Below are positions 60-21,770 of a DNA stretch of 21,925 nt, in pieces (position 1 is the stretch's first letter; each line of letters starts with the position of its first letter). Origin of the DNA: Octopus sinensis. Taxonomy: Eukaryota. Location: the NCBI RefSeq assembly GCF_006345805.1, contig NW_021837016.1, positions 1 to 21,925 on the forward strand. Reading direction: 5' to 3'. The notes beneath the pieces were generated by a model. It saw only the letters and a program-made list of their open reading frames with translations. It was not told the DNA's origin and made no database searches. The translations under genes and the position numbers were made by a program.

Positions 60-125
<66 letters not shown>

Positions 126-155
126 TTATAATCTGCCTATCTATCTATCTACCTC

Positions 156-189
<34 letters not shown>

Positions 190-240
190 GCTATCTATCT
201 ATCTATCTATTATTTATCTGCCTATCTATCTATCTACCTC

Positions 241-307
<67 letters not shown>

Positions 308-435
308 GCCTATCTATCTATCTACCTCTCTATCTATCTATCTATCTATCTACATATATACACACACACACACATATACACACAAACACAACACACACAC
401 ACACACACACACATACACACACATACACACACACG
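15..435. repeat. Compound microsatellite (CA)n-(TCTA)n-(CA)n
   Basis: Directly visible; accounts for ORFs 1..459 and 44..442 (LSIY/THTH repeats). Confidence 0.97.
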
Positions 436-1057: not shown

Positions 1058-1115
<58 letters not shown>

Positions 1116-1613
1116 ATACATATATATAATATATAATCATATATATATATGTATATATATGTATATATATGTTGTATATATTTAATTATGTGTGTATATA
1201 TATGTATATATGTACATATATATGTATATATATATGTGTGTGTGTATATGTGTATATATATGTATATATATTGTATATATATATATAATATATATGTGTA
1301 TATATATATGTGTATTATATATATATATATATATATACTTATATGTTGTATATATATATGTGTATATATATAATAATATATATGTGTATATATATATATT
1401 TATTATATATGTATATATATATGTATATAATATATGTTGTATATATATGTATATATATATATATGTATATATATGTATATACATATGTTGTATATATATA
1501 TGTATATATATATGTGTGGTATATATATATATGTATATATATATGTGTGTATCTATATATATGTATATATATATTGTGTGTATATATATATGTATATATA
1601 TATGTATATATAT
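1040..1613. repeat. (TA)n/(ATATGT)n degenerate microsatellite, left flank of the 595-bp array
   Basis: Directly visible; accounts for the YIYI/MYIC ORFs. Confidence 0.95.
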
Positions 1614-1801
1614 ATACTAAGCAATAAGGGTTTAGCAACGAGTTGCCTTACCACATACCAAATTTAGAAATAGCAGTCAAGGGTTATAGCTATTTCTTCT
1701 ACTAAAAAAGGAGATCTCAGTAAAAACAGCATTTGGAAGGCAGACACAAACAGGTAAGAGAGAATGAATTGACTGCAATCTATCATACATTTTTTTAGTT
1801 A

Positions 1802-1907
1802 TCCACGGACGTACGTTTCGAAATCAAGTTTTAAGGAAAGCATAAGAATTAATATTAAATATTAAATAATTCTATCTTACCGAAACTTCTTTTCTCTTCA
1901 GCGTAGA
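1802..1907 (-). ncRNA. Type I hammerhead ribozyme, copy 1
   Basis: Minus strand: stem I UCUACG/CGUGGA; core CUGAAGA; stem II GAAA-AG-AAGUUU/AAACUU-GA-UUUC plus a long AU-rich extension; GAA-AC-GUAC-GU-C. Predicted cleavage after GUC, between 1808 and 1807. Confidence 0.87.
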
Positions 1908-2398
1908 ATACTATAATCATAAATGATTATATATTGAATTTTGAGATACCAGAAGGCCCAAACTCAACTCAGTATCAGAGCGAGCTAGAATCCGCAACTG
2001 GTATCACCGAATTCAATTTGTGAATGAAACGATTGTGTCAACAGCCCCTTCCCACCCGCGTGTAGCCAAACAGAGAGCTGCTGGTCATCTACTGAGATAA
2101 AATATGTTTATCCGTAATAATGAAGGTGAAATTAATTAATTTGGAAAAATTATCAATTACACCAAGTAGTCTTCGGCATGTAAAAGCCTCATTCGAGGAA
2201 ATTTTAAGTAATACTAAGCAATAAGGGTTTAGCAACGAGTTGCCTTACCACATACCAAATTTAGAAATAGCAGTCAAAGGGTTATATCTATTTCTTCTAC
2301 TAAAAGGGGAGATCTCAGTAAAAACAAGCATTTGGAAGGCAACACAAACAGGTAAGAGAGAATGAATTGACTGCAATCTATCATCATTTTTTTAGTTA

Positions 2399-2505
2399 TC
2401 CACGGACGTACGTTTCGAAATCAAGTTTTAAGGAAAGCATAAGAATTAAATATTAAATATTAAATAATTCTATCTTACCGAAACTTCTTTTCTCTTCAGC
2501 GTAGA
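2399..2505 (-). ncRNA. Type I hammerhead ribozyme, copy 2
   Basis: Same core and stems as copy 1; predicted cleavage between 2405 and 2404. Confidence 0.87.
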
Positions 2506-2992
2506 ATACTATAATCATAAATGATTATATATTGAATTTTGAGATACCAGAAGGCACCAACTCAACTCAGTATCAGAGCGAGCTAGAATCCGCACTGGTA
2601 TCACCGAATTCAATTTGTGAATGAAACGATTGTGTCAACAGCCCCTTCCCACCCGCGTGTAGCCAAACAAGATGCTGTGGTCATCTACTGAGATAAAATA
2701 TGGTTATCCGTAATAATGAAGGGTGAAATTAATTAATTTGGAAAAATTATCAATTACACCAAGTAGTCTTCGGCATGTAAAAGCCTCATTCGAGGAAAAT
2801 TTAAGTAATACTAAGCAATAGGGTTTAGCAACGAGTTGCCTTACCACATACCAAATTTAGAAATAGCAGTCAAAGGGTTATAGCTATTTCTTCTACTAAA
2901 AAGGGAGATCTCAGTAAACAAGCATTTGGAAGGCAGACACAAACAGGTAAGAGAATGAATTGACTGCAATCTATCATACATTTTTTTAGTTA

Positions 2993-3099
2993 TCCACGGA
3001 CGTACGTTTCGAAATCAAGTTTTAAGGAAAGCATAAGAATTAAATATTAAATATTAAATAATTCTATCTTACCGAAACTTCTTTTCTCTTCAGCGTAGA
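2993..3099 (-). ncRNA. Type I hammerhead ribozyme, copy 3
   Basis: Same core and stems; predicted cleavage between 2999 and 2998. Confidence 0.87.
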
Positions 3100-3586
3100 A
3101 TACTATAATCATAAATGATTATATATTGAATTTGAGATACCAGAAGGCACCAACTCAACTCAGTATCAGAGCGAGCTAGAATCCGCAACTGGTATCACCG
3201 AATTCAATTTGTGAATGAAACGATTGTGTCAACAGCCCCTTCCCACCCGCGTGTAGCCAAACAAGATGCTGTGGTCATCTACTGAGATAAAATATGGTTA
3301 TCCGTAATAATGAAGGGTGAAATTAATTAATTTGGAAAAATTATCAATTACACCAAGTAGTCTTCGGCATGTAAAAGCCTCATTCGAGGAAAATTTAAGT
3401 AATACTAAGCAATAAGGGTTTAGCAACGAGTTGCCTTACCACATACCAATTTAGAAATAGCAGTCAAAGGGTTATAGCTATTTCTTCTACTAAAAAGGGA
3501 GATCTCAGTAAAAACAGCATTTGGAAGGCAGACACACAGGTAAAGAGAATGAATTGACTGCAATCTATCATACATTTTTTTAGTTA

Positions 3587-3693
3587 TCCACGGACGTACG
3601 TTTCGAAATCAAGTTTTAAGGAAAGCATAAGAATTAAATATTAAATATTAAATAATTCTATCTTACCGAAACTTCTTTTCTCTTCAGCGTAGA
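3587..3693 (-). ncRNA. Type I hammerhead ribozyme, copy 4
   Basis: Same core and stems; predicted cleavage between 3593 and 3592. Confidence 0.87.
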
Positions 3694-4181
3694 ATACTAT
3701 AATCATAAATGATTATATATTGATTTTGAGATACCAGAAGGCACCACTCAACTCAGTATCAGAGCGAGCTAGAATCCGCAACTGGTATCACCGATTCAAT
3801 TTGTGAATGAAACGATTGTGTCAACAGCCCCTTCCCACCCGCGTGTAGCCAAAACAAGATGCTGTGGTCATCTACTGAGATAAAATATGGTTATCCGTAA
3901 TAATGAAGGGTGAAATTAATTAATTTGGAAAAATTATCAATTACACCAAGTAGTCTTCGGCATGTAAAAGCCTCATTCGAGGAAAATTTAAGTAATACTA
4001 AGCAATAAGGGTTTAGCAACGAGTTGCCTTACCACATACCAAATTTAGAAATAGCAGTCAAGGGTTATAGCTATTTCTTCTACTAAAAGGGGAGATCTCA
4101 GTAAAAACAGCATTTGGAGGCAGACACAAACAGGTAAGAGAGAATGAATTGACTGCAATCTATCATACATTTTTTTAGTTA

Positions 4182-4287
4182 TCCACGGACGTACGTTTCG
4201 AAATCAAGTTTTAAGGAAAGCATAAGAATTAAATATTAATATTAAATAATTCTATCTTACCGAAACTTCTTTTCTCTTCAGCGTAGA
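4182..4287 (-). ncRNA. Type I hammerhead ribozyme, copy 5
   Basis: Same core and stems; predicted cleavage between 4188 and 4187. Confidence 0.87.
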
Positions 4288-4775
4288 ATACTATAATCAT
4301 AAATGATTATATATTGAATTTTGAGATACCAGAAGGCACCAACTCAACTCAGTATCAGAGCGAGCTAGAATCCGCAACTGGTATCACCGAATTCATTTGT
4401 GAATGAAACGATTGTGTCAACAGCCCCTTCCCACCCGCGTGTAGCCAAAACAAGATGCTGTGGTCATCTACTGAGAAAAATATGGTTATCCGTAATAATG
4501 AAGGGTGAATTAATTAATTTTTGGAAAAATATCAATTACACCAAGTAGTCTTCGGCATGTAAAAGTCTCATTCGAGGAATTTAAGTAATACTAAGCAATA
4601 AGGGTTTAGCAACGAGTTGCCTTACCACATACCAAATTTAGAATAGCAGTCAAAGGTTATAGCTATTTCTTCTACTAAAAAGGGAGATCTCAGTAAAAAC
4701 AGCATTTGGAAGGCAGACACAAACAGGTAAGAGAGAATGAATTGACTGCAATCTATCATACATTTTTTTTAGTTA

Positions 4776-4878
4776 TCCACGGACGTACGTTTCGAAATCA
4801 TTTTAAGGAAGCATAAAATTAAATATTAAATATTAAATAATTCTATCTTACCGAAACTTCTTTTCTCTTCAGCGTAGA
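4776..4878 (-). ncRNA. Type I hammerhead ribozyme, copy 6
   Basis: Core, stem I and stem III intact; small deletions in distal stem II. Predicted cleavage between 4782 and 4781. Confidence 0.82.
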
Positions 4879-4931
4879 ATACTATAATCATAAATGATTA
4901 TATATGAATTTTGAGATACCAGAAGGCACCA

Positions 4932-5450
4932 GTATATATATATATATGTGTCATATATATGATATGTATAATATTATATATGTGAATATATAAGGTATAT
5001 ATATATATATGTATATGCATATATATGTGTTATATATAACATGTATATATAATGTGTAATTATATATATGTGTACATATATATATATATCATTACATAAT
5101 ATATGTGTAATATATATAGATGTAATACATAATATGTGTTACATATATTATAGTTACATAACATATATATTGTAGATTCTTATATGTATATATATGATTG
5201 TATATAATATGTATATATATATATTATATATATGTATATTGGCATATATATGCATTATATATATAACATGCATATATATGTATGTGGTATACATGTACAA
5301 CATACGCATACGTGTAAACAATGCATATATATATATGTGCAATATATGTATATATACATATATAGATATGTATATATTATAGATATATATATATAAGTTA
5401 TATTATACATCAACTCACACATACATATATAAACGCGAACATATATAAAC
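4932..5450. repeat. Degenerate (TA)n-rich microsatellite, right flank of the array
   Basis: Directly visible. Confidence 0.92.
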
Positions 5451-6689: not shown

Positions 6690-7236
6690 CTTAGAAAGGT
6701 TTTAGCCAGTATTGGCCCAGGCCATGTCTAACTTAATAGCACCACTTGACGAAATCTTTCAATTCAGGATTTGGGCGCCAAGGCCCATTCGAGCAGAGAG
6801 TTATTGTTTGTTTAGACCAGTGGTTTTCAACCAGGGTTCCGCCAGTACAGTCCAGGGGTTCCGCAAGAAGTTACAAAAATGCTAAAATCGACAGTAATTT
6901 TTAATTCTCCTGTGCAGATATGTGTGCATAAGACAATTAAATTATTGCACAGGGGTTCCTCGAGCCAGTGAAATGTTTTCTTGGGGTTCCGCTCGAGCAA
7001 AAAGGTTGAAAAGCACTGGTTTAGACGTATCCGGGTGTGGGTGGTTTGTCCGGGACTGTTTGAAGGAATTTGTCCAAAGACTTCTTGAATTTTGTGTGGT
7101 CAGTTTCTGTTTTGACGTGTCCTGGTGTAATGTTGAAGAGAGCGGTTCCAATTGAGGTGAAATAATTGTGCCGTATTGTTGTTATGAGATGTGATTTAAA
7201 TTTTTGTTGTTGACGGATGGCACGGGGTCCAGGTCT
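6690..7236 (-). mobile_element. 3' fragment of a CR1-group LINE (ORF2 C-terminus and 3' UTR), interrupted by a MITE
   Basis: Minus translation SIGTALFNITP...KFKKSLDKFLQTVPDKPPTPGYV resembles RGPQLFNILP...VFKMKLDLFLSGVPDEPTS of the LINE at 14381-15028. After removing the MITE the frame continues (stop)TNNNSLLEW, compared with ASNSLMHQ. Confidence 0.75.
6818..7018. mobile_element. hAT-superfamily (Charlie-like) MITE, 201 bp
   Basis: TIRs CAGTGGTTTTCAACC / GGTTGAAAAGCACTG and a perfect 8-bp TSD GTTTAGAC at 6810-6817 and 7019-7026. Confidence 0.9.
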
Positions 7237-7239
7237 TGC

Positions 7240-7420
7240 ATTTGACTGCGGCCATGCTGGAGCACCGCCTTTAGTCGAACAAATCGATCCCCAGGATTTG
7301 TTCTTTGTACGCCTGCTACTTCTGTCGGCCTTTTCAGCCGAATCGCTAAGATACGGACACGCAAACACACCACCATCGGTTGTCAAGCGATGTTGGGGGA
7401 CAAACACGCACACAAACACA

Positions 7421-7467
<47 letters not shown>

Positions 7468-7715
7468 ACACAATATAATAAACTTATATATAATTATATA
7501 TATATATATAGATATAATATATATATATATAATATATTATATATATATATATACGACCGGGCTTCTTTCAGCATGCGTCTACAAATCCACTCAGAAGGCT
7601 TTGGTAGGCCTGAGCCTATAGCAGAAGACACTTACCCAAAGTGCCACGCAGTGGGACTGAACCCGGAACCATGTGGTTGGTAAGCAAGCTGCTTACCACA
7701 CAGCCACTCCTGCGC
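7240..7715 (-). mobile_element. tRNA-derived SINE (family A) with internal (TA)n/(TG)n and a LINE-like 3' tail
   Basis: A box TGGCTGTGTGG (7696-7706), B-box-like GGTTCAGTCCC (7653-7663). The head (7553-7715) is repeated at 21554-21717. The tail GGCGGTGCTCCAGCATGGCCGCAG matches the LINE 3' end at 15040-15063. Confidence 0.8.
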
Positions 7716-7939
7716 TTGTTTTTTTAAAAATTTTTAAAAATTTTTGCTTTTATCTCTCTTTATTTTCTGAGTTCAAATTCCGTCCAGATTGACGTCTAAA
7801 TTTGGAGATTTAGGAAATTAATTCACTGAATCATTTGTATCGACCAGACTGTTGGATCTTGTGGTACACCGCTGGTCACGATTCACTTCGTTGCGTTCTA
7901 CTGCTTTTTCGAAGGATATCAACCCACCGCTGGCTTGAC

Positions 7940-9088: not shown

Positions 9089-9164
9089 TTCATGACGAAT
9101 TGATACACGCACAAACAGACGAACCTAAATAATAATAATAATAATATAATAATAATAATAATAA

Positions 9165-9380
9165 TCCTTTCTACTAAACGTTCAAAGCCTGAAATTTTGG
9201 GGTGGCGGGCTAGTCGATTAGATCGACCCCAGTACGTAACTGGTACTTAATTTATCGACCCCGAAATGAGGAAAGGCAAAATCGACCATGGCGGAATTTG
9301 AACTCAGAACGTAGCGATGGGCGAAATACTGCTAAGCATTTTGACCGGTGTGCTAGCGATTCTGCCAGCTCGCCGCCTTA
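9165..9380 (-). mobile_element. SINE (family C) with (ATT)n tail at 9128-9165
   Basis: TAAGGCGGCGAGCTGGCAGAATCG head, GAGTTCAAATTCC box and AGTAGAAAGG end; four copies in the window. Confidence 0.85.
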
Positions 9381-9430: not shown

Positions 9431-9990
9431 TGCCCTGATGCAGTACCAGGCAGTGGCTCTCATGGCTTCTGATCTTAACTGATTGGAAGTGTTATCGTGT
9501 ACATTGTTTTGTCTTGGTATAAAAGATGGGCTACAGCAAATATTCTGCTCAATACCAGAGATTTGCTTGTCAGTTGTTTGACCTTAACCAGTTGAGCATG
9601 TCCCTTAGTGGCTGACGATATGTGCATCTCTGATCACGAGCAGAAGTAGTGGGGGAGCATCATAGCCATGTGTTGAGAAGGATTCTTTGGGGTTTGAATA
9701 ATTCACCTCTGGAAACATGGGTGTTTCGTTCAACGTCCTTAAACAACCCTTATTCAGGGACCTTTTGAGTGGGATGGGCTACTTGATCTGAAGAAATTTC
9801 TAACTGGGCCCCACCTGCAAGGTCATGCGCTATTTATCTTGATATGAGATCACCATGTTACGCACATATTGTTGTGATGCCTGGTGTACCCTTATCAGAC
9901 GGGTAGTCATGATGGGTATATTGGGCTTCGTATATCTTAACCCAGTGTCACTTTGACGGCATGCACTGCTCTCTTTCTCTCGCACTCACT
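9431..9990 (-). repeat. Interspersed repeat of about 550 bp (family D), copy 1
   Basis: Inverted near-copy of 15118-15640 (e.g. CTTCTGCTCGTGATCAGAGATGCACATATCGTCAGCCACTAAGGGACATGCTC). Class and polarity not established. Confidence 0.85.
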
Positions 9991-10800: not shown

Positions 10801-10815
10801 CACACGCACATATTA

Positions 10816-10816
10816 T

Positions 10817-10864
<48 letters not shown>

Positions 10865-10887
10865 ATATATATATATATATATATATA

Positions 10888-10938
<51 letters not shown>

Positions 10939-10963
10939 TTCTTTCTCTATCTATCTATCTATC
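10816..10963. repeat. (TCTA)n-(TA)n-(TCTG)n compound microsatellite
   Basis: Directly visible. Confidence 0.95.
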
Positions 10964-11804
10964 TGGGTCAATCTTGAGCGACTTCAACACAGCCAAAGCA
11001 TTCTATAGGGGATTAGTGGAGGGGAGGTACGACGACGAGCTAGGTACGAACCTGGACGTCGACGAGGAATACCTGACCAGCCTGTTCAGGACGTCTTTCA
11101 GGCCAGGACCCATGGATAACTTCCAGATATCCCTGGCCTGGCAGTGCTACCGAGAAGCGCTACCCGTTTGGGATAAGCTCTACAGACACGGCTCGAGAAA
11201 CACGGGGCCTACCTGCCTGAGATGAGGTCAGAGCGACGAAACCGTTCTGCACGAACTCGTACAGTGTCCAACCATTTCCGACCTGTGGGCTTATGTCGAA
11301 CGACTGCTGTCACGTGTGGGACGAGTCGGTTTATCAGCCGAGTCTGTCGTCAATATTGTCACGCCTCCTTCCTTCAAACGGGAAGGAAGAGCTATTTTCA
11401 TCATTCTTGTGGCTATGGCGAAAGAATGTATCTGGTGGACACGTCTGAAATTATAGGAGACAAACACTTTCCTCTCTGGTCAATCTCTCATCAACTTCTT
11501 CAAGTATCACTTGAAAAGGAAAGTGAGAGTAGAGAGGCAAGTTTTGTCTATTGAATGTTTCAAAAAATGATGGGTGAATGTAGCAAGGATGGCATGTATG
11601 AATGACGAAACCACCTTCAGCATAATCCTATGAACCCGGAAAAATTTTAAACAGAGGGTTATTTTCTTGCAAACAAATGTATTAACATGTGACATTATGG
11701 ACCGAGGTTACCGTGGTCTTTTCCCAGTTTTTTTTCTCCACAGAAAAGCTCTACTTTGTAATCTGTCCCGTCTGTGTGCAGCCCTGTGAGGCTAATAAAG
11801 AAAC
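10964..11804 (+). mobile_element. 5'-truncated Tx1/L1-clade LINE 3' fragment (ORF2 C-terminus with CCHC zinc motif, 3' UTR), inactivated
   Basis: One frame reads FNTAKAFYRGL...LPVWDKLYRHG...TCLR*GQSDETVLHELVQCPTISDLW...AKECIWWTR...FKK*WV...IIL* (ends 11633). This is a zf-RVT-type CxxC...H...C motif with 3 premature stops. AATAAA at 11794-11799, then (TATC)n. Confidence 0.8.
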
Positions 11805-12374: not shown

Positions 12375-12591
12375 TAAGGCAGCGAGCTACCAGAGTGGCT
12401 AGCACGCTGGACGAAATTCTTAGAACCATTTTGGCCATCTTTACATACTTAGTTCAGCTTCCACCGAGGCCAGCTTTGCATTCCATCTTTTCGAGTCGAT
12501 AAAACAAGTACCAGCTGAGCACTAGGGTCGATGTAACTGATTGGAACCCCTCCCTACCCAAAATTTCAAGCTTTGTACCTCAGTAGAAAGA
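12375..12591 (+). mobile_element. SINE (family C) with (ATT)n tail at 12592-12638
   Basis: TAAGGCAGCGAGCT head and AGTAGAAAG end shared with the other family C copies. Confidence 0.8.
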
Positions 12592-12638
12592 ATTATTATT
12601 GTTGTTGTTATTAATATTATTATTATTATTATTATTAA

Positions 12639-15105
12639 TACACTGGATCTCTGCTTCACAAATGACATGGATCTCATCCATAATGTGAAAGTGACACCGA
12701 CACTACTCTCGGATCACAACATGATAGAGCTGACCATGTACGGGCCAAAAGAGAGCACGGACATGCAGCCTACAAGAAACCCCCAGAATCTTTCCAGCTT
12801 GAACTACCATAAGGCAAACTGGAAACAAATTGAGAAAGAGATCCTCAAACAAAACTGGCCTAAATGTCTCTCCTCGCCAGACATCGACGTGAAACTTCAA
12901 CAATTCATGTCTGTAATGCAAGCCATATGCTACAAATGTGTCCCAGAGAGAAAGGCCACTGTACACAAGAACAAAATCCCCAGAGAGAGGAAAATTTTAA
13001 TGAGACGGCGTACAAAATTTTCAAATCGCCTAAACAAACAATTGAAAGCAGTGAAAAGTCCCGCCTAAAAATAAAACTGTTGGAAATCGAAAAATGTCTG
13101 CAACTCTCCCATGAAAAGGAAGAGCAGACAAAGAAGCCTGGGCTATAGACAACATAAAATCTAACCCCAGAGCTTTCTACAGGTATGCCAAAGAAACAGC
13201 TACGGTGCACTGTAGAATAGGGCCACTCCTCGAAAAGGATGGCACACTTACAGGAAAAACCAATGAGGGTAAGTGAAATACTGAATGAGCAATTCAAGAG
13301 TGTTTTCACTCCACCCCTTGGGCATCTCCAAATCACCAATCCAACTGACTTTTTTACCACTGCAGATATAAAATCAGAGGCGGCGACGATAGATTACATC
13401 GATATAAAGGAAGACGATGTAATCAAGGCTATAGATGAAATGAAAACAGACTCAGCTACTGGCCCCGATGGATTCCCGCAATCCTCCTAAAAGCATGTAA
13501 GAGAGTCCTAGCAAGACCACTGCAGTTCCTCTTTCAGAGCTTCTTGCAGCTGGCAAACTTCCAAGAAAACTGAAGGAAGGTAAAATATGCCCCATTCATA
13601 AAGGAGGTAGCAGAGCGGAAGCCAAGAACTATAGACCTATCTCTCTGACCTCACACATCAGCAAGGTCATGGAACGAATAGTCAGAAGGAAGCTGATCAC
13701 CTTCCTTGAAGAGAATGACTTGCTGCCCGACACCCAACATGGTTTCCGACCAGGGAGAAGCTGTTTATCTCAGCTCCTACAACACTATGACTGGGTGCTG
13801 AAACGGCTGCTCAACCACTCAAATGTGGAAGTGATATATCTCGACTTTGCAAAGGCCTTGATAAAGTCGATCATGGAATGATATGTCACAAACTGCGTGA
13901 TCTCAACATAGTTGGAAAACTGGGAGAATGGCTTCATGACTTTCTGAAAGATAGAAGTCAGGTGGTAGTGGCCAATGGGGCCACTTCCATTAACACGCAA
14001 ATAGTGAGCGGTGTTCCGCAGGGCACTGTTCTGGGACCACTACTGTTCATAATGGCCCTCTCAGACATGCCCTCAGCCACGCAGAGAGCCACGATCACAA
14101 GTTATGCAGATGATACAAAAGTTTCACAGGCAATACAGAACCCTGAGGACACTAAACACCTGCAATGTGAGCTAGACAAAATATACAAGTGGGCCGAAAA
14201 GAATAGCATGCAGTTCAATGCTGAAAAGTTTCAAGCTCTATACTATCAGCATGCAAAACTAAATGCAATACCCAATCAATACACTGGACCCGGAGGAATA
14301 GCAATCCCAGAGGCACAATCAGTGCGTGACCTAGGTATTTACATGAGTGATGACGCACCTTTCGTGTACATGTTGCTAAATTGGCAATGAAATGTAGACG
14401 ACTGGCCGGATGGATCCTCAGAACCTTTAGAACAAGAGAACAAGAAACCATGATGGTCCTCTGGAGGACACTTGTCCTAAGCCACTTTGACTATTGCTCT
14501 CAGCTATGGTCACCATCCAGTGTCAAGTTGATCACAGAGCTCGAGGCGATCCAACGTAGCTACACGAAGAAGATAGCCTCTATGCAGAATGTAAGCTACT
14601 GGGAAAGACTCAAGAGATTAAAACTATATTCCCTGGAGCGTAGGCGGGAAAGATATGCCATAATATACATCTGGAAGATCCTGGAGGGAAGTGTCCTGAA
14701 CTTTGGCATCGAGAGTAACGCAAATGCCAGAACTGGGCGCCACTGCGTGGTGCCTAGGACTCCAAACCTGCCATCAAGATGTAGGACAAGATTCTGTGAT
14801 AGCCTGGGCTTCCGAGGCCCACAGCTCTTCAATATCCTCCCGAAGAACCTGAGAGACCTGCATGGGGTGGATGCAGATGTCTTTAAAATGAAGCTGGATC
14901 TCTTCCTGTCAGGTGTCCCAGATGAACCAACTTCACGGCAGGAGGGGCAGATGAGGGCAGCTGCATCGAACTCTCTCATGCACCAAATAGCAGTTGCTAG
15001 AAAGCCTTCATTAAGTGAAACCAAGTAGCAACACCAAATGGCGGTGCCCCAGCATGGCCACAGCTCATAAGCTGAAACTAGAATCAATCAATCAATCAAT
15101 CAATC
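12639..15105 (+). mobile_element. 5'-truncated CR1-group non-LTR retrotransposon (end of APE domain, reverse transcriptase, 3' UTR, (AATC)6 tail); frameshifted in this sequence
   Basis: APE end LDLCFTN...LSDHNMI; RT motifs ATGPDG, NYRPISLTSHISKVMERIV, QHGFRPGRSCLSQLL, VIYLDFAKA, SGVPQGTVLGPLLFI and YADDTK; C-terminal LEAIQR...LERRRERY; stop at 15028; (AATC)n at 15082-15105. Split over about 7 frameshifts. Confidence 0.93.
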
Positions 15106-15117
15106 ATTATTATTATT

Positions 15118-15640
15118 GACTGAGAGAGCAGTTCATGCCATCAAAATGACACTGGGGTAAAATATACGAAGCCCAGTATATCCACCATGGCTACCCGTCT
15201 GGTAAGGGTACACCAGGCACATGCATCACAACCATATGTGCGCGACATGGTGATCTCATATCAAGATAAACAGCATATGACCTTGCAGGTGGGGCCCAGT
15301 TAGAAATTTCTGCAGGTTGAGTAGCCCATTCCGCTCAAAAGGTCCCTGAATAAGGGTTGTTTAAGGATGCTGAACGAAACACCCATGTTTCCAGAGGTGA
15401 ATTATTCAAACCCCAAAGAATCCCTCTCAACACATGGTTATGATGCTCCCCCACTACTTCTGCTCGTGATCAGAGATGCACATATCGTCAGCCACTAAGG
15501 GACATGCTCCACTGGTTACGGTCAAACAACTGACAAGCAAATCTGTGGTATTGAGCAGAATATTTGCTGTAAAACCCATCTTTTATACCAAGATAAAACA
15601 ATGTACATGATAACACTTCCAAATGTACATGATAACACTT
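15118..15640 (+). repeat. Interspersed repeat (family D), copy 2
   Basis: Inverted near-copy of about 9490-9990; ends in a 19-bp local duplication. Confidence 0.85.
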
Positions 15641-15705: not shown

Positions 15706-15912
15706 TAAGGCAGCGAGCTGGCCGAATCGTTAGTGAGCCGGACAAAATGTTCAGCGGCATTTCGCCCATCTAAGTTCAAATTCCGACAGACTCGATTTTG
15801 CCCTTCATCCTTTCGAGGTCAATGAAATAAGTACCAGTTGAGCACTGGGGTCGGTGTAATTGGCTGTCCCCTTCTCCCAAAATTGCTGGCCTTGTGCCCA
15901 TTGTAGAAAGAA
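15706..15912 (+). mobile_element. SINE (family C)
   Basis: TAAGGCAGCGAGCTGGCCGAATCG...AAGTTCAAATTCC...GTAGAAAG; preceded by (ATT)n. Confidence 0.82.
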
Positions 15913-15974
15913 TTGTATCTAATGGGTTAAATCTAAAAAGAAATGAAAATTCAGCTCTTACAGGATGTAAAACC

Positions 15975-16465
15975 TTTTTGGAAAACCGTATGCATTTGAA
16001 AGAATTTAAAAGAGGTTTTTACGGGGGTTATTGAATGGGTTCAGCTGTTAATGGGTTCTGGGTTAAAAGGTTGGAAAGGAGTTTAAATGGGTTCTGCTGT
16101 AAAAAGGTAGGAAACTGCTGACCTAGATAGACTGGCCCTTTAAAGAAGTGAAGAGACCTGGTAAGAAACTTTTTTAGAAAACCCTGCGGATTTGAAAGAA
16201 ATTAAAGAGGTTTACGGGGGTTATTGAATTTACCAAAATGGGTTCTTCTGTTGAAAGATTGGAAAGTGCTGATCTAGATAGACTAGCCCTTTAAAGAAGT
16301 GAATAGGTCTGGCAAGAAAGTTTTTTTTTAGAAAACCCTGCGAATTTGAAAGAAATTAAAGAGGTTTATGGGGGTTATTGAATTTACCAAAATGGGTTCT
16401 TCTGTTGAAAGATTGGAAAGTGCTGATCTAGACAGACTGGCCTTTAAAGAAGTGAAGAGACCTGA
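15975..16465. repeat. Tandem repeat, ~154-bp unit (two close copies plus one diverged, longer copy)
   Basis: GAAAACC landmark at 15981, 16177 and 16331; shared GGGGGTTATTGAAT, CTAGATAGACT and TTTAAAGAAGTGAA blocks. Confidence 0.85.
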
Positions 16466-19330: not shown

Positions 19331-19396
19331 TCTCTCTCTCTCTCTCTCTTTCTCCATATATATATATATATGTATGTATATATTTATATATATATC

Positions 19397-19450
<54 letters not shown>

Positions 19451-19962
19451 TATCTTTATATATATATATATATCTTTATATATATAGATAATATGTATAT
19501 ATCGTTATGTATGTATATATATTTATATATATATATAAATACATATATATATCTTTATATATATATATATAGATATATGTATATATCTTTATGTAGTATA
19601 TATCTTTTATATATATATATAAATACATATATATATTTATATATATATATAGATATATATGTATATATCTTTCTGTATGTATATATCTTTTTATATATAT
19701 ATAAATACATATATATATCTTTATATATATATATATAGATATATATGTATATTTTATGTATGTATATATCTTTTATATATATATATATATATAAATACAT
19801 ATATATAATCTTTATATATATATATAGATATATATGTTATATATTTATGAATGTATATATCTTTTATTATATATATATATAAATACATATATATATATAG
19901 ATATATATGTATATATCTTTATGTATGTATATATCTTTTTATATATATATAAATACATTTAT

Positions 19963-19999
<37 letters not shown>

Positions 20000-20107
20000 C
20001 ATATATATATCTTTATATATAAATACATATATATATATATCTCATATATATATAGATATATATGTATTATTTTATGTATGTATATATCTTTTTATAGATA
20101 TATAAAC

Positions 20108-20155
<48 letters not shown>

Positions 20156-20165
20156 TGTGTGTGTG
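19331..20165. repeat. (TC)n-(TA)n tract with a higher-order 70-90 bp AT-rich minisatellite
   Basis: AAATACAT landmark at 19537, 19621, 19703, 19793, 19881 and 19951 inside TA repeats. Confidence 0.9.
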
Positions 20166-21553: not shown

Positions 21554-21717
21554 ACGACAGGCTTCTTTCAGTTTCCGTCTACCAAATCCACCCAGAAGGC
21601 TTTGGTCGGCCTGAGGCTATAGCAGAAGACACTTGCCCAAAATGCCACGCAGTGGGACTGAACCCGGAACCATGTGGTTGGTAAACAAGCTACTTACCAC
21701 ACAGCCACTCCTGAGCC
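21554..21717 (-). mobile_element. tRNA-derived SINE (family A) head
   Basis: Near-copy of 7553-7715 with the same A and B boxes. Confidence 0.85.
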
Positions 21718-21770
21718 TATATGTATATATCTGTTAGAAGTATTGGGGGTGATGTACAGATTTAATACAT

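What the first reader, a model, noticed from the sequence alone, without database searches (positions are those of the whole stretch)
1614..4931. Tandem array of six hammerhead ribozymes spaced ~595 nt apart: candidate cephalopod retrozyme / circRNA-producing system
Seen: each unit encodes on the minus strand UCUACG-CUGAAGA-[stem II closed by G-C]-GAAAC-GUAC-GUC-CGUGGA. All conserved hammerhead core nucleotides are present, with a GUC cleavage triplet. Stem I extends through an internal loop to UAGU/ACUA. Predicted cuts at 1807, 2404, 2998, 3592, 4187 and 4781 give spacings of 597, 594, 594, 595 and 594 nt. The unit has no ORF. Established: tandem Type I hammerheads mark Penelope-like element pseudo-LTRs, newt and schistosome satellite transcripts, and animal non-LTR retrozymes that self-cleave into monomers and accumulate as circRNA. 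Inference: a minus-strand read-through transcript would be cut into five ~595-nt monomers. That is longer than the few-hundred-nt animal retrozyme monomers I recall, and I know of no described cephalopod family, but I could not check novelty.
Basis: partly seen in the sequence, partly recalled or inferred. Interest (0 to 1): 0.92.

Follow-up and report, generated by a model that had tools for sequence, protein, structure and literature searches.

The report
Hammerhead ribozyme tandem repeat (retrozyme-like)
A 3.3-kb tandem repeat in what is probably an octopod genome carries six intact copies of a self-cleaving hammerhead ribozyme motif about 595 nt apart, which fits the already known animal 'retrozyme' class of small circular-RNA-producing repeats and is not a new kind of element.

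Summary
On the minus strand, six type-I hammerhead (HHR) motifs with a complete catalytic core sit at the stated positions, 594-597 nt apart, in a 5.6-unit array (1614-4931) embedded in a (TA)n microsatellite. Chance does not explain it: 5 of 20,000 shuffled units gave any descriptor hit, and the rest of the window gave none. The cut-to-cut monomer is non-coding, 35% GC and strongly self-paired (z = -7.05), more so than its complement (z = -3.67). Rfam's Hammerhead_1 model aligns end to end, but only below threshold (17.7 bits against 34), because helix II carries a 72-nt insertion.

The retrozyme interpretation is the best fit. The novelty claim is overstated. Published non-LTR retrozyme units span 51-972 bp. 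A ~500-bp hammerhead satellite has been known since 2000. Type-I hammerheads were already counted in the giant squid genome. (TA)n is a documented target of Penelope-like elements (PLEs).

Not shown here: self-cleavage, circular RNA, transcription, mobility, or any link to a PLE (none is in the window). No other copy could be found in any searchable collection, so there is no covariation evidence.

Verdict: a new member of a known kind with an unusually long helix II. Interest is modest.

The parts
1614..4931 (-). Tandem array: 150-nt partial unit, five full units (594, 595, 594, 594, 597 nt cut to cut) and a 194-nt partial unit. Consensus is 599 nt, 34.7% GC, non-coding.
4770..4884 (-). Hammerhead copy 1 (extended helix I to extended helix I); C17 at 4782. 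The helix II arm is 3-4 nt shorter than in the other copies.
4176..4293 (-). Hammerhead copy 2; C17 at 4188
3581..3699 (-). Hammerhead copy 3; C17 at 3593. This is the copy folded and aligned to Rfam RF00163.
2987..3105 (-). Hammerhead copy 4; C17 at 2999
2393..2511 (-). Hammerhead copy 5; C17 at 2405
1796..1913 (-). Hammerhead copy 6; C17 at 1808
2999..3592 (-). Representative cut-to-cut monomer (594 nt), the predicted linear or circular RNA product. MFE -163.3 kcal/mol, z = -7.05.
1058..1613 (.). (AT)n microsatellite flanking the array; together with 4932-5395 it is the probable insertion target
4932..5395 (.). (TA)n-rich microsatellite flanking the other end of the array

Best explanation
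The array is a non-autonomous, non-coding hammerhead repeat of the metazoan non-LTR retrozyme (hammerhead satellite) kind, probably in an octopod genome. Proposed mechanism, by analogy with published retrozymes: the minus strand is transcribed as a multimer. Each type-I hammerhead cuts after GUC, giving ~595-nt monomers with 5'-OH and 2',3'-cyclic phosphate ends. Cutting happens either on a single motif (2-bp helix III with a GUAC loop) or, more efficiently, as a double hammerhead in which the palindrome ACGUACGU of two motifs forms an 8-bp helix III. A host RNA ligase then closes the highly base-paired monomers into circles. A retroelement reverse transcriptase supplied in trans (most likely from a Penelope-like element) copies the RNA into tandem cDNA, which is integrated at (TA)n. 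Shown here: the motif, its statistical non-randomness, the tandem non-coding architecture, the strand-biased predicted RNA structure, and the (TA)n location. Inferred: transcription, cleavage, circularisation, and retrotransposition with its enzyme source.
For: The core is complete (C3-A9 = CUGAAGA, G12-A14, A15.1-U16.1, C17, G10.1-C11.1), with 6-bp helix I, and is present six times. The motif is rare in shuffles (5 of 20,000; 1 of 20,000 as good) and absent from the other 18.6 kb. Rfam Hammerhead_1 aligns over model positions 1-45 of 45, and bases next to the core also match the consensus. The monomer is strongly structured on the hammerhead strand and much less so on the complement: linear z -7.05 vs -3.67; circular consensus z -5.66 vs -2.77; 21 vs 11 G-U pairs. 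Helices I and II are part of the global MFE. The co-fold of two motifs forms the intermolecular helix III, at -57.2 kcal/mol against 2 x -22.4. GC is 34.7% with no ORF and no protein homolog in any frame. These match the published family description: type-I HHR, tandem, low GC, no LTR/PBS/PPT, highly self-paired (PMC7229834). Unit size and copy number fall in the published range. The array lies inside a (TA)n tract, a documented preferred target of EN+ Penelope-like elements (PMC8557442). (TA)n covers only about 7-12% of the rest of the window. The array ends map to consensus positions 446 and 195, not to the cleavage site, which fits rolling-circle copying of a circle.
Against: No hammerhead reaches Rfam's gathering score (17.7 vs 34 bits). 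By my arithmetic from that E-value, a few hundred chance hits at this score are expected in a genome of a few Gb. Helix II carries a ~72-nt insertion instead of a short capped stem. Changes in stem II length are reported to lower activity by disturbing the stem I-II tertiary contact (PMC3088659), so in vivo activity is uncertain. The copies are 97-99.7% identical, so core conservation inside the array is barely informative: P about 0.02 for no variable column among 39 essential positions. There is no covariation. No second locus or relative was found in any collection. No Penelope-like ORF is in the window. TSDs cannot be read in the microsatellite. The array could equally have grown by unequal crossing-over at the DNA level.
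Confidence: 0.78

Rival explanations
1. It is an ordinary AT-rich satellite or minisatellite in which a hammerhead-like motif arose by chance. It makes no ribozyme, and the array grew by unequal crossing-over or replication slippage.
For: The Rfam score is below threshold. The six copies are really one observation. Central copies are more alike than edge copies, as in arrays homogenised by crossing-over. No other locus was found. Perreault et al. warn that consensus-conforming hammerheads occur by chance in large databases.
Against: Chance is about 2.5e-4 per unit for any hit and 5e-5 for one as good. The motif also has features my descriptor did not require: G10.1-C11.1, a GUC triplet, palindromic ACGUACGU like the Rfam consensus ACGCGCGU, and internal loops after 6 bp (helix I) and 4 bp (helix II). 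The monomer is strongly structured with a bias towards the hammerhead strand.
Confidence: 0.1
2. The unit is the pseudo-LTR (or a solo pLTR array) of an autonomous Penelope-like element present elsewhere in the genome, not a separate non-autonomous family.
For: PLE pLTRs carry type-I hammerheads, PLEs occur in cephalopods and prefer (TA)n. In Xenopus, retrozyme families are sister to PLE pLTRs.
Against: There is no RT of PLE type and no GIY-YIG domain in any of 79 ORFs of the window; the only RT is a LINE about 7.6 kb away. No frame of the unit has any protein homolog. The array has 5.6 head-to-tail units with nothing between them. From memory, published PLE hammerheads are minimal variants with a 1-bp helix III, unlike this one.
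Confidence: 0.08
3. The hammerhead is real, but the array is a transcribed satellite in the newt satellite 2 or pDo500 sense. Its transcripts are processed into monomers with some host role, and it does not move through an RNA intermediate.
For: The architecture is the same as the classical hammerhead satellites. Nothing in the window demonstrates mobility.
Against: Those satellites have themselves been reinterpreted as retrozymes. This array is short and isolated inside a (TA)n tract among dispersed repeats, which looks like an insertion and not a satellite block.
Confidence: 0.04

Closest known systems
Metazoan non-LTR retrozymes (Cervera & de la Pena 2020, PMC7229834; Li, Clavereau & Pollet 2026 preprint)
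   Same: Type-I hammerhead once per unit; head-to-tail tandem array of a few units; no LTR, PBS, PPT or ORF; low GC; highly self-paired monomer. Helix III of 2 bp with a tetraloop is described as typical of invertebrate motifs. Size is within the 51-972 bp range.
   Different: Helix II is a ~76-nt imperfect arm instead of a short capped stem, so the canonical loop 1-loop 2 contact cannot form as drawn. No expression, circularity or multi-locus data are available. No cephalopod family is described in the searchable literature.
pDo500 satellite DNA of Dolichopoda cave crickets
   Same: A large tandem unit (~500 bp, my recollection) carrying one type-I hammerhead. Single and double hammerhead forms have been proposed.
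   Different: The pDo500 ribozyme is compact (49 nt) and has comparative support: 19 compensatory changes across 12 species. This element has no comparative data at all.
Newt satellite 2 / axolotl retrozymes (HHR_Amex1 and HHR_Amex2)
   Same: Weak helix III capped by a palindromic tetraloop, which allows cleavage as a dimer. The co-fold predicts the same here.
   Different: Their units are 330-350 bp with canonical loop 1-loop 2 contacts and copy numbers up to ~10^5. Here the unit is 595 nt, helix II is long and the copy number is unknown.
Hammerheads in pseudo-LTRs of Penelope-like elements
   Same: Type-I topology, tandem arrangement and preference for (TA)n insertion sites.
   Different: Those flank an RT-GIY-YIG ORF, and none is present here.
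Plant LTR retrozymes
   Same: Circles of similar size (600-1000 nt), non-coding and highly structured.
   Different: They have type-III hammerheads within LTRs, PBS/PPT, GC above 55% and 4-bp TSDs.

Membership tests
Hammerhead ribozyme, type I (Rfam RF00163) | Conserved core: C3 U4 G5 A6 N7 G8 A9, G12 A13 A14, A15.1-U16.1, H17 not G | tested here: met
   CUGAAGA ... GAAA ... U-C17 in all six copies; every core column matches in the CM alignment
Hammerhead ribozyme, type I (Rfam RF00163) | Three helices around the core, open at helix I | tested here: met
   Helix I is 6 bp plus a 4-bp extension. Helix II has a 4-bp base closed by G-C plus a long arm. Helix III is 2 bp plus GUAC, or 8 bp between molecules.
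Hammerhead ribozyme, type I (Rfam RF00163) | Score at or above the curated gathering threshold (34 bits) | tested here: not met
   17.7 bits, E = 0.057, and only on a 141-nt slice. The alignment shows a 72-nt insertion in helix II.
Hammerhead ribozyme, type I (Rfam RF00163) | Tertiary contact between loop 1 and loop 2 for activity at physiological Mg2+ | tested here: inconclusive
   There is no capping loop 2. 2x2 internal loops lie 6 bp (helix I) and 4 bp (helix II) from the core and might substitute; this is inference only.
Hammerhead ribozyme, type I (Rfam RF00163) | Site-specific self-cleavage | not testable with these tools
   Needs an in vitro transcription assay
Metazoan non-LTR retrozyme | Type-I hammerhead once per unit in head-to-tail tandem repeats (dimers to multimers) | tested here: met
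   Six motifs across 5.6 units
Metazoan non-LTR retrozyme | No LTR, PBS, PPT or coding capacity; low GC (below 45-50%) | tested here: met
   GC is 34.7%. ORFs are at most 51 aa, and no frame has a protein homolog.
Metazoan non-LTR retrozyme | Monomer RNA is highly self-paired | tested here: met
   z = -7.05 linear and -5.66 circular; 64% of bases are paired
Metazoan non-LTR retrozyme | Expressed as linear and circular RNA of unit length | not testable with these tools
   No transcriptome access
Metazoan non-LTR retrozyme | Dispersed multi-copy family with insertion signatures (TSDs when present) | tested here: inconclusive
   There is one locus only, and no other copy in any collection searched. 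TSDs cannot be read inside (TA)n.
Metazoan non-LTR retrozyme | Co-occurrence with autonomous Penelope-like elements in the genome | not tested
   None is in the window. The literature reports PLEs in cephalopods.
Penelope-like element pseudo-LTR | Repeat flanks an ORF encoding RT plus a GIY-YIG endonuclease | tested here: not met
   The only Pfam hit of that kind among 79 ORFs is RVT_1, on a LINE-type element at 12.5-15 kb. No GIY-YIG was found.

The most novel reading that the evidence does not exclude
The hammerhead is active in vivo despite a ~76-nt helix II arm, using internal loops in helices I and II in place of the canonical loop-loop contact. It would then represent a class of long-helix-II retrozymes that threshold-based Rfam annotation systematically misses, and it would yield an abundant ~595-nt, highly double-stranded circular RNA in cephalopod tissues.
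Probability: 0.2. Interest if true: 0.55.

Novelty: new member of a known kind. Interest (0 to 1): 0.33.

Why it matters
If confirmed, it would extend hammerhead retrozymes to cephalopods, for which I found no described family. It would also show that a hammerhead with a very long helix II escapes standard Rfam-threshold annotation, so counts such as the 235 loci in the giant squid may be underestimates. It would give a natural test case for how far helix II can be extended while keeping activity. It does not open a new category: the architecture, size range, target preference and proposed life cycle are all published.

Tried and rejected
1. Rfam at gathering score and at E<=10 over 1500-5100 found no ribozyme. 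Only microsatellite-driven miRNA noise appeared.
2. TRF missed the array because its period cap is 500.
3. Exact-product look-ups of three window ORFs found nothing on record.
4. A 502-aa six-frame peptide query built from the unit consensus, run against 5.8 billion proteins to catch spurious ORFs on related contigs, gave no hit at E<=10.
5. DNA pattern scans gave nothing in viral contigs (two scans) or genome contigs (two scans). The first metagenome scan gave nothing. The second gave four 18-mer matches, all on GC-rich prokaryote-like contigs with no CUGANGA upstream, so I treat them as chance.
6. 21 kb of Argonauta hians DNA and a 2-kb metagenome scaffold carrying the closest LINE RTs contain neither the unit nor any hammerhead.
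7. A literal-string search of the literature for the hammerhead's 3' half gave nothing.
8. blastn of the consensus against the rest of the window showed no fragment copies.
9. A second ribozyme of opposite polarity was considered: no type-I hit on the plus strand and no other ribozyme family at E<=10. Type II and type III descriptors were not written.
10. An assembly artefact was considered. Many 1-nt homopolymer indels between copies suggest long-read errors, and the copy number could be off, but the array is anchored in non-array sequence on both sides.
Full report
**Observation**

They are UCUACG-CUGAAGA and GAAAC-GUAC-GUC-CGUGGA. The cleavage-site C17 lies at 4782, 4188, 3593, 2999, 2405 and 1808.

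The repeat finder recovers the ~594-nt periodicity between 1669 and 4931. TRF missed it only because its period limit is 500. The array runs from 1614 to 4931. On the hammerhead strand it consists of a 150-nt partial unit, five full units and a 194-nt partial unit. Full copies are 97-99.7% identical outside gaps and differ mostly by single-base homopolymer indels. Those indels may be long-read sequencing errors.

The longest start-to-stop ORF inside the units is 51 aa, and the longest stop-to-stop frame of the consensus is 58 aa.

**Is the motif more than chance?**

I wrote a type-I descriptor: CUGANGA, a closed helix II, GAAA, a helix III hairpin with A15.1-U16.1, H17 not G, and helix I of at least 4 bp.

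- It hits only these six sites on either strand of the whole 21.9-kb window.
- Among 20,000 dinucleotide-preserving shuffles of the unit (both strands, circularly extended), 5 gave any hit. One had helices as long as the real ones.
- RNAfold of one motif reproduces the hammerhead. Helix I has 6 bp, a 2x2 internal loop and then 4 more pairs (UAGU/ACUA). Helix II has a 4-bp base closed by G10.1-C11.1, a 2x2 internal loop and then a long imperfect AU-rich arm.

Rfam is less generous. Nothing reaches gathering score in the window, and nothing hammerhead-like appears at E<=10 over 1500-5100. When only a 141-nt slice is searched, so that the filters relax, RF00163 Hammerhead_1 is the best hit and aligns over the whole model (positions 1-45 of 45). 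Every core column matches, and bases next to the core also match the consensus. The alignment places a 72-nt insertion in helix II, where the model expects about 10 nt. The score is 17.7 bits against a threshold of 34, with E = 0.057.

That score is not genome-wide significant on its own. By my arithmetic from the E-value, a few hundred such hits would be expected by chance in a genome of a few Gb. The case rests on the combination with the features below. The six copies are near-identical, so they count as one observation.

**The RNA product**

- A cut-to-cut monomer (window 2999-3592, minus strand) folds to -163.3 kcal/mol. Shuffles average -123.5 +/- 5.6, giving z = -7.05.
- The complementary strand reaches only -134.2 kcal/mol, z = -3.67.
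- Folded as a circle, the 599-nt consensus gives z = -5.66 on the hammerhead strand and -2.77 on the complement. G-U pairs number 21 and 11 respectively, and 64% of bases are paired on the hammerhead strand.
- This strand bias is what selection on an RNA made from the hammerhead strand would produce.
- Helices I and II of the hammerhead are part of the global minimum-energy fold, so the ribozyme fold does not compete with the rest of the molecule.
- Helix III is only A-U and C-G capped by GUAC. However, ACGUACGU is a palindrome, and two motifs co-fold into an 8-bp intermolecular helix III while keeping helices I and II. The dimer energy is -57.2 kcal/mol, against 2 x -22.4 for separate monomers.
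- This double-hammerhead arrangement is described for newt and axolotl repeats. A 2-bp stem with a tetraloop is described as typical of invertebrate motifs (PMC7229834).

**Context**

The array sits inside (TA)n, with microsatellite at 1058-1616 on one side and 4933-5395 on the other. Target-site duplications therefore cannot be read. The junctions share only 1-3 nt with the unit.

The array ends map to consensus positions 446 and 195, not to the cleavage site. That fits copying of a circular template from an arbitrary start, but it also fits DNA-level events. (TA)n covers only about 7-12% of the rest of the window. It is a documented preferred target of endonuclease-bearing Penelope-like elements (PMC8557442). 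This is modest support for integration by that machinery.

No fragment of the unit occurs elsewhere in the window. Pfam scans of 79 open frames outside the array found only RVT_1 and no GIY-YIG domain. The RT belongs to a frameshifted element at 12.5-15 kb. Its upstream frame contains an SDH motif, which from memory is typical of APE-type LINE endonucleases. So the array is not the pseudo-LTR of a Penelope-like element at this locus.

**Host**

The RT fragment's best named relative is a protein of Argonauta hians at 60% identity. The window also shares repeat families with a 21-kb A. hians locus: a ~110-nt SINE-like element (76-79% identity, two copies each), another short repeat (74%) and the LINE (67%). 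An octopod, or at least cephalopod, origin is supported. The species is not identified.

**Search for relatives**

This was the main gap, and it stayed open. All of the following found nothing genuine:

- exact-product look-ups of window ORFs;
- a six-frame peptide query from the unit against 5.8 billion predicted proteins;
- six DNA pattern scans of the viral, metagenome and prokaryote-genome collections;
- inspection of the A. hians locus and a metagenome scaffold.

The only matches were four chance 18-mers in GC-rich prokaryote-like contigs. There is therefore no covariation evidence, no copy-number estimate and no test of a Penelope link. Within the array, none of 57 variable columns falls in the 39 essential hammerhead positions, which is only marginal (P about 0.02).

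**Comparison with what is known**

The element meets every sequence-level feature given for metazoan non-LTR retrozymes. These are a type-I hammerhead, tandem units, no LTR/PBS/PPT, low GC and a highly self-paired monomer (PMC7229834).

- A 2026 preprint (10.64898/2026.07.22.740005) reports consensus lengths of 51-972 bp, averaging 650 bp in ray-finned fishes. It says 75% of families have at most seven units, and it places retrozymes as non-autonomous relatives of Penelope pLTRs.
- The pDo500 cricket satellite, whose unit is about 500 bp by my recollection, carries a 49-nt type-I hammerhead and has comparative support.

Cephalopods are not blank either. The giant squid genome paper lists 235 Hammerhead_1 loci at Rfam threshold, and it reports Penelope elements (PMC6962438). 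No paper I could search describes a cephalopod retrozyme family or prints this sequence.

The unusual feature is the ~76-nt helix II arm. It removes the canonical loop 2 and drops the motif below Rfam's threshold. Small changes in stem II length have been reported to lower activity (PMC3088659). In vivo competence is therefore an open question. The internal loops 6 bp into helix I and 4 bp into helix II might supply the tertiary contact, but that is inference.

**Verdict**

The best explanation (about 0.78) is a hammerhead retrozyme-type repeat. Its transcripts would self-cleave into ~595-nt monomers, probably helped by dimerisation, and those monomers could be circularised and copied back into DNA by a retroelement enzyme supplied in trans. 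Only the sequence-level anatomy is shown; every biochemical step is inferred.

The rivals are a chance motif in an ordinary satellite (about 0.10), the pLTR of an autonomous Penelope-like element located elsewhere (about 0.08), and a transcribed but immobile satellite (about 0.04).

It is a new member of a known kind with an atypical helix II, and interest is modest.

Noticed in passing
window 12541-15028 (+): Frameshifted LINE-type retrotransposon remnant. One frame contains an SDH motif, which I take from memory to be the end of an APE-type endonuclease. Others carry RVT_1 with a YADD motif and a C-terminal region. It is split over at least four frames. The best relatives are a metagenome scaffold protein (72%) and an Argonauta hians protein (60%).
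   Followed up: partly
window 7558-7726 and 21555-21727: Two copies of a short interspersed element: 145 nt at 91% identity to each other. Two copies at 76-79% identity are also present in the Argonauta hians locus L006. It is SINE-like, but ARAGORN found no tRNA-like part.
   Followed up: partly
window 9532-9883 and 15220-15571 (also 9163-9308 / 15769-15914): A large inverted repeat (352 nt, 94% complementary, with weaker outer extensions) brackets the 5.3-kb region that holds the LINE remnant. It could be two opposed copies of one repeat or the ends of a larger element.
   Followed up: no
window 16085-16464: A 154-bp tandem repeat, 2.5 copies, 89% matches. It is unrelated to the hammerhead unit.
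   Followed up: no
window 7021-7300 (-): The ORF tail '...KFKKSLDKFLQTVPDKPPTPGY' resembles the C-terminal tail of the LINE ORF at 14381-15028 ('FKMKLDLFLSGVPDEPT'). This is probably a second, inverted LINE 3' fragment.
   Followed up: no
window 60-352, 1058-1616, 4933-5395, 10814-10964, 19356-20156: Microsatellite load is very high. It includes (ATCT)73, (TATC)38 and several (TA)n tracts up to 800 bp. (TA)n alone is about 12% of the non-array sequence.
   Followed up: partly
window 1614-4931: Most differences between the repeat copies are 1-nt length changes in homopolymer runs. This pattern is typical of uncorrected long-read assembly errors, so the exact unit lengths (594-597) and perhaps the copy number should be treated with caution.
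   Followed up: partly
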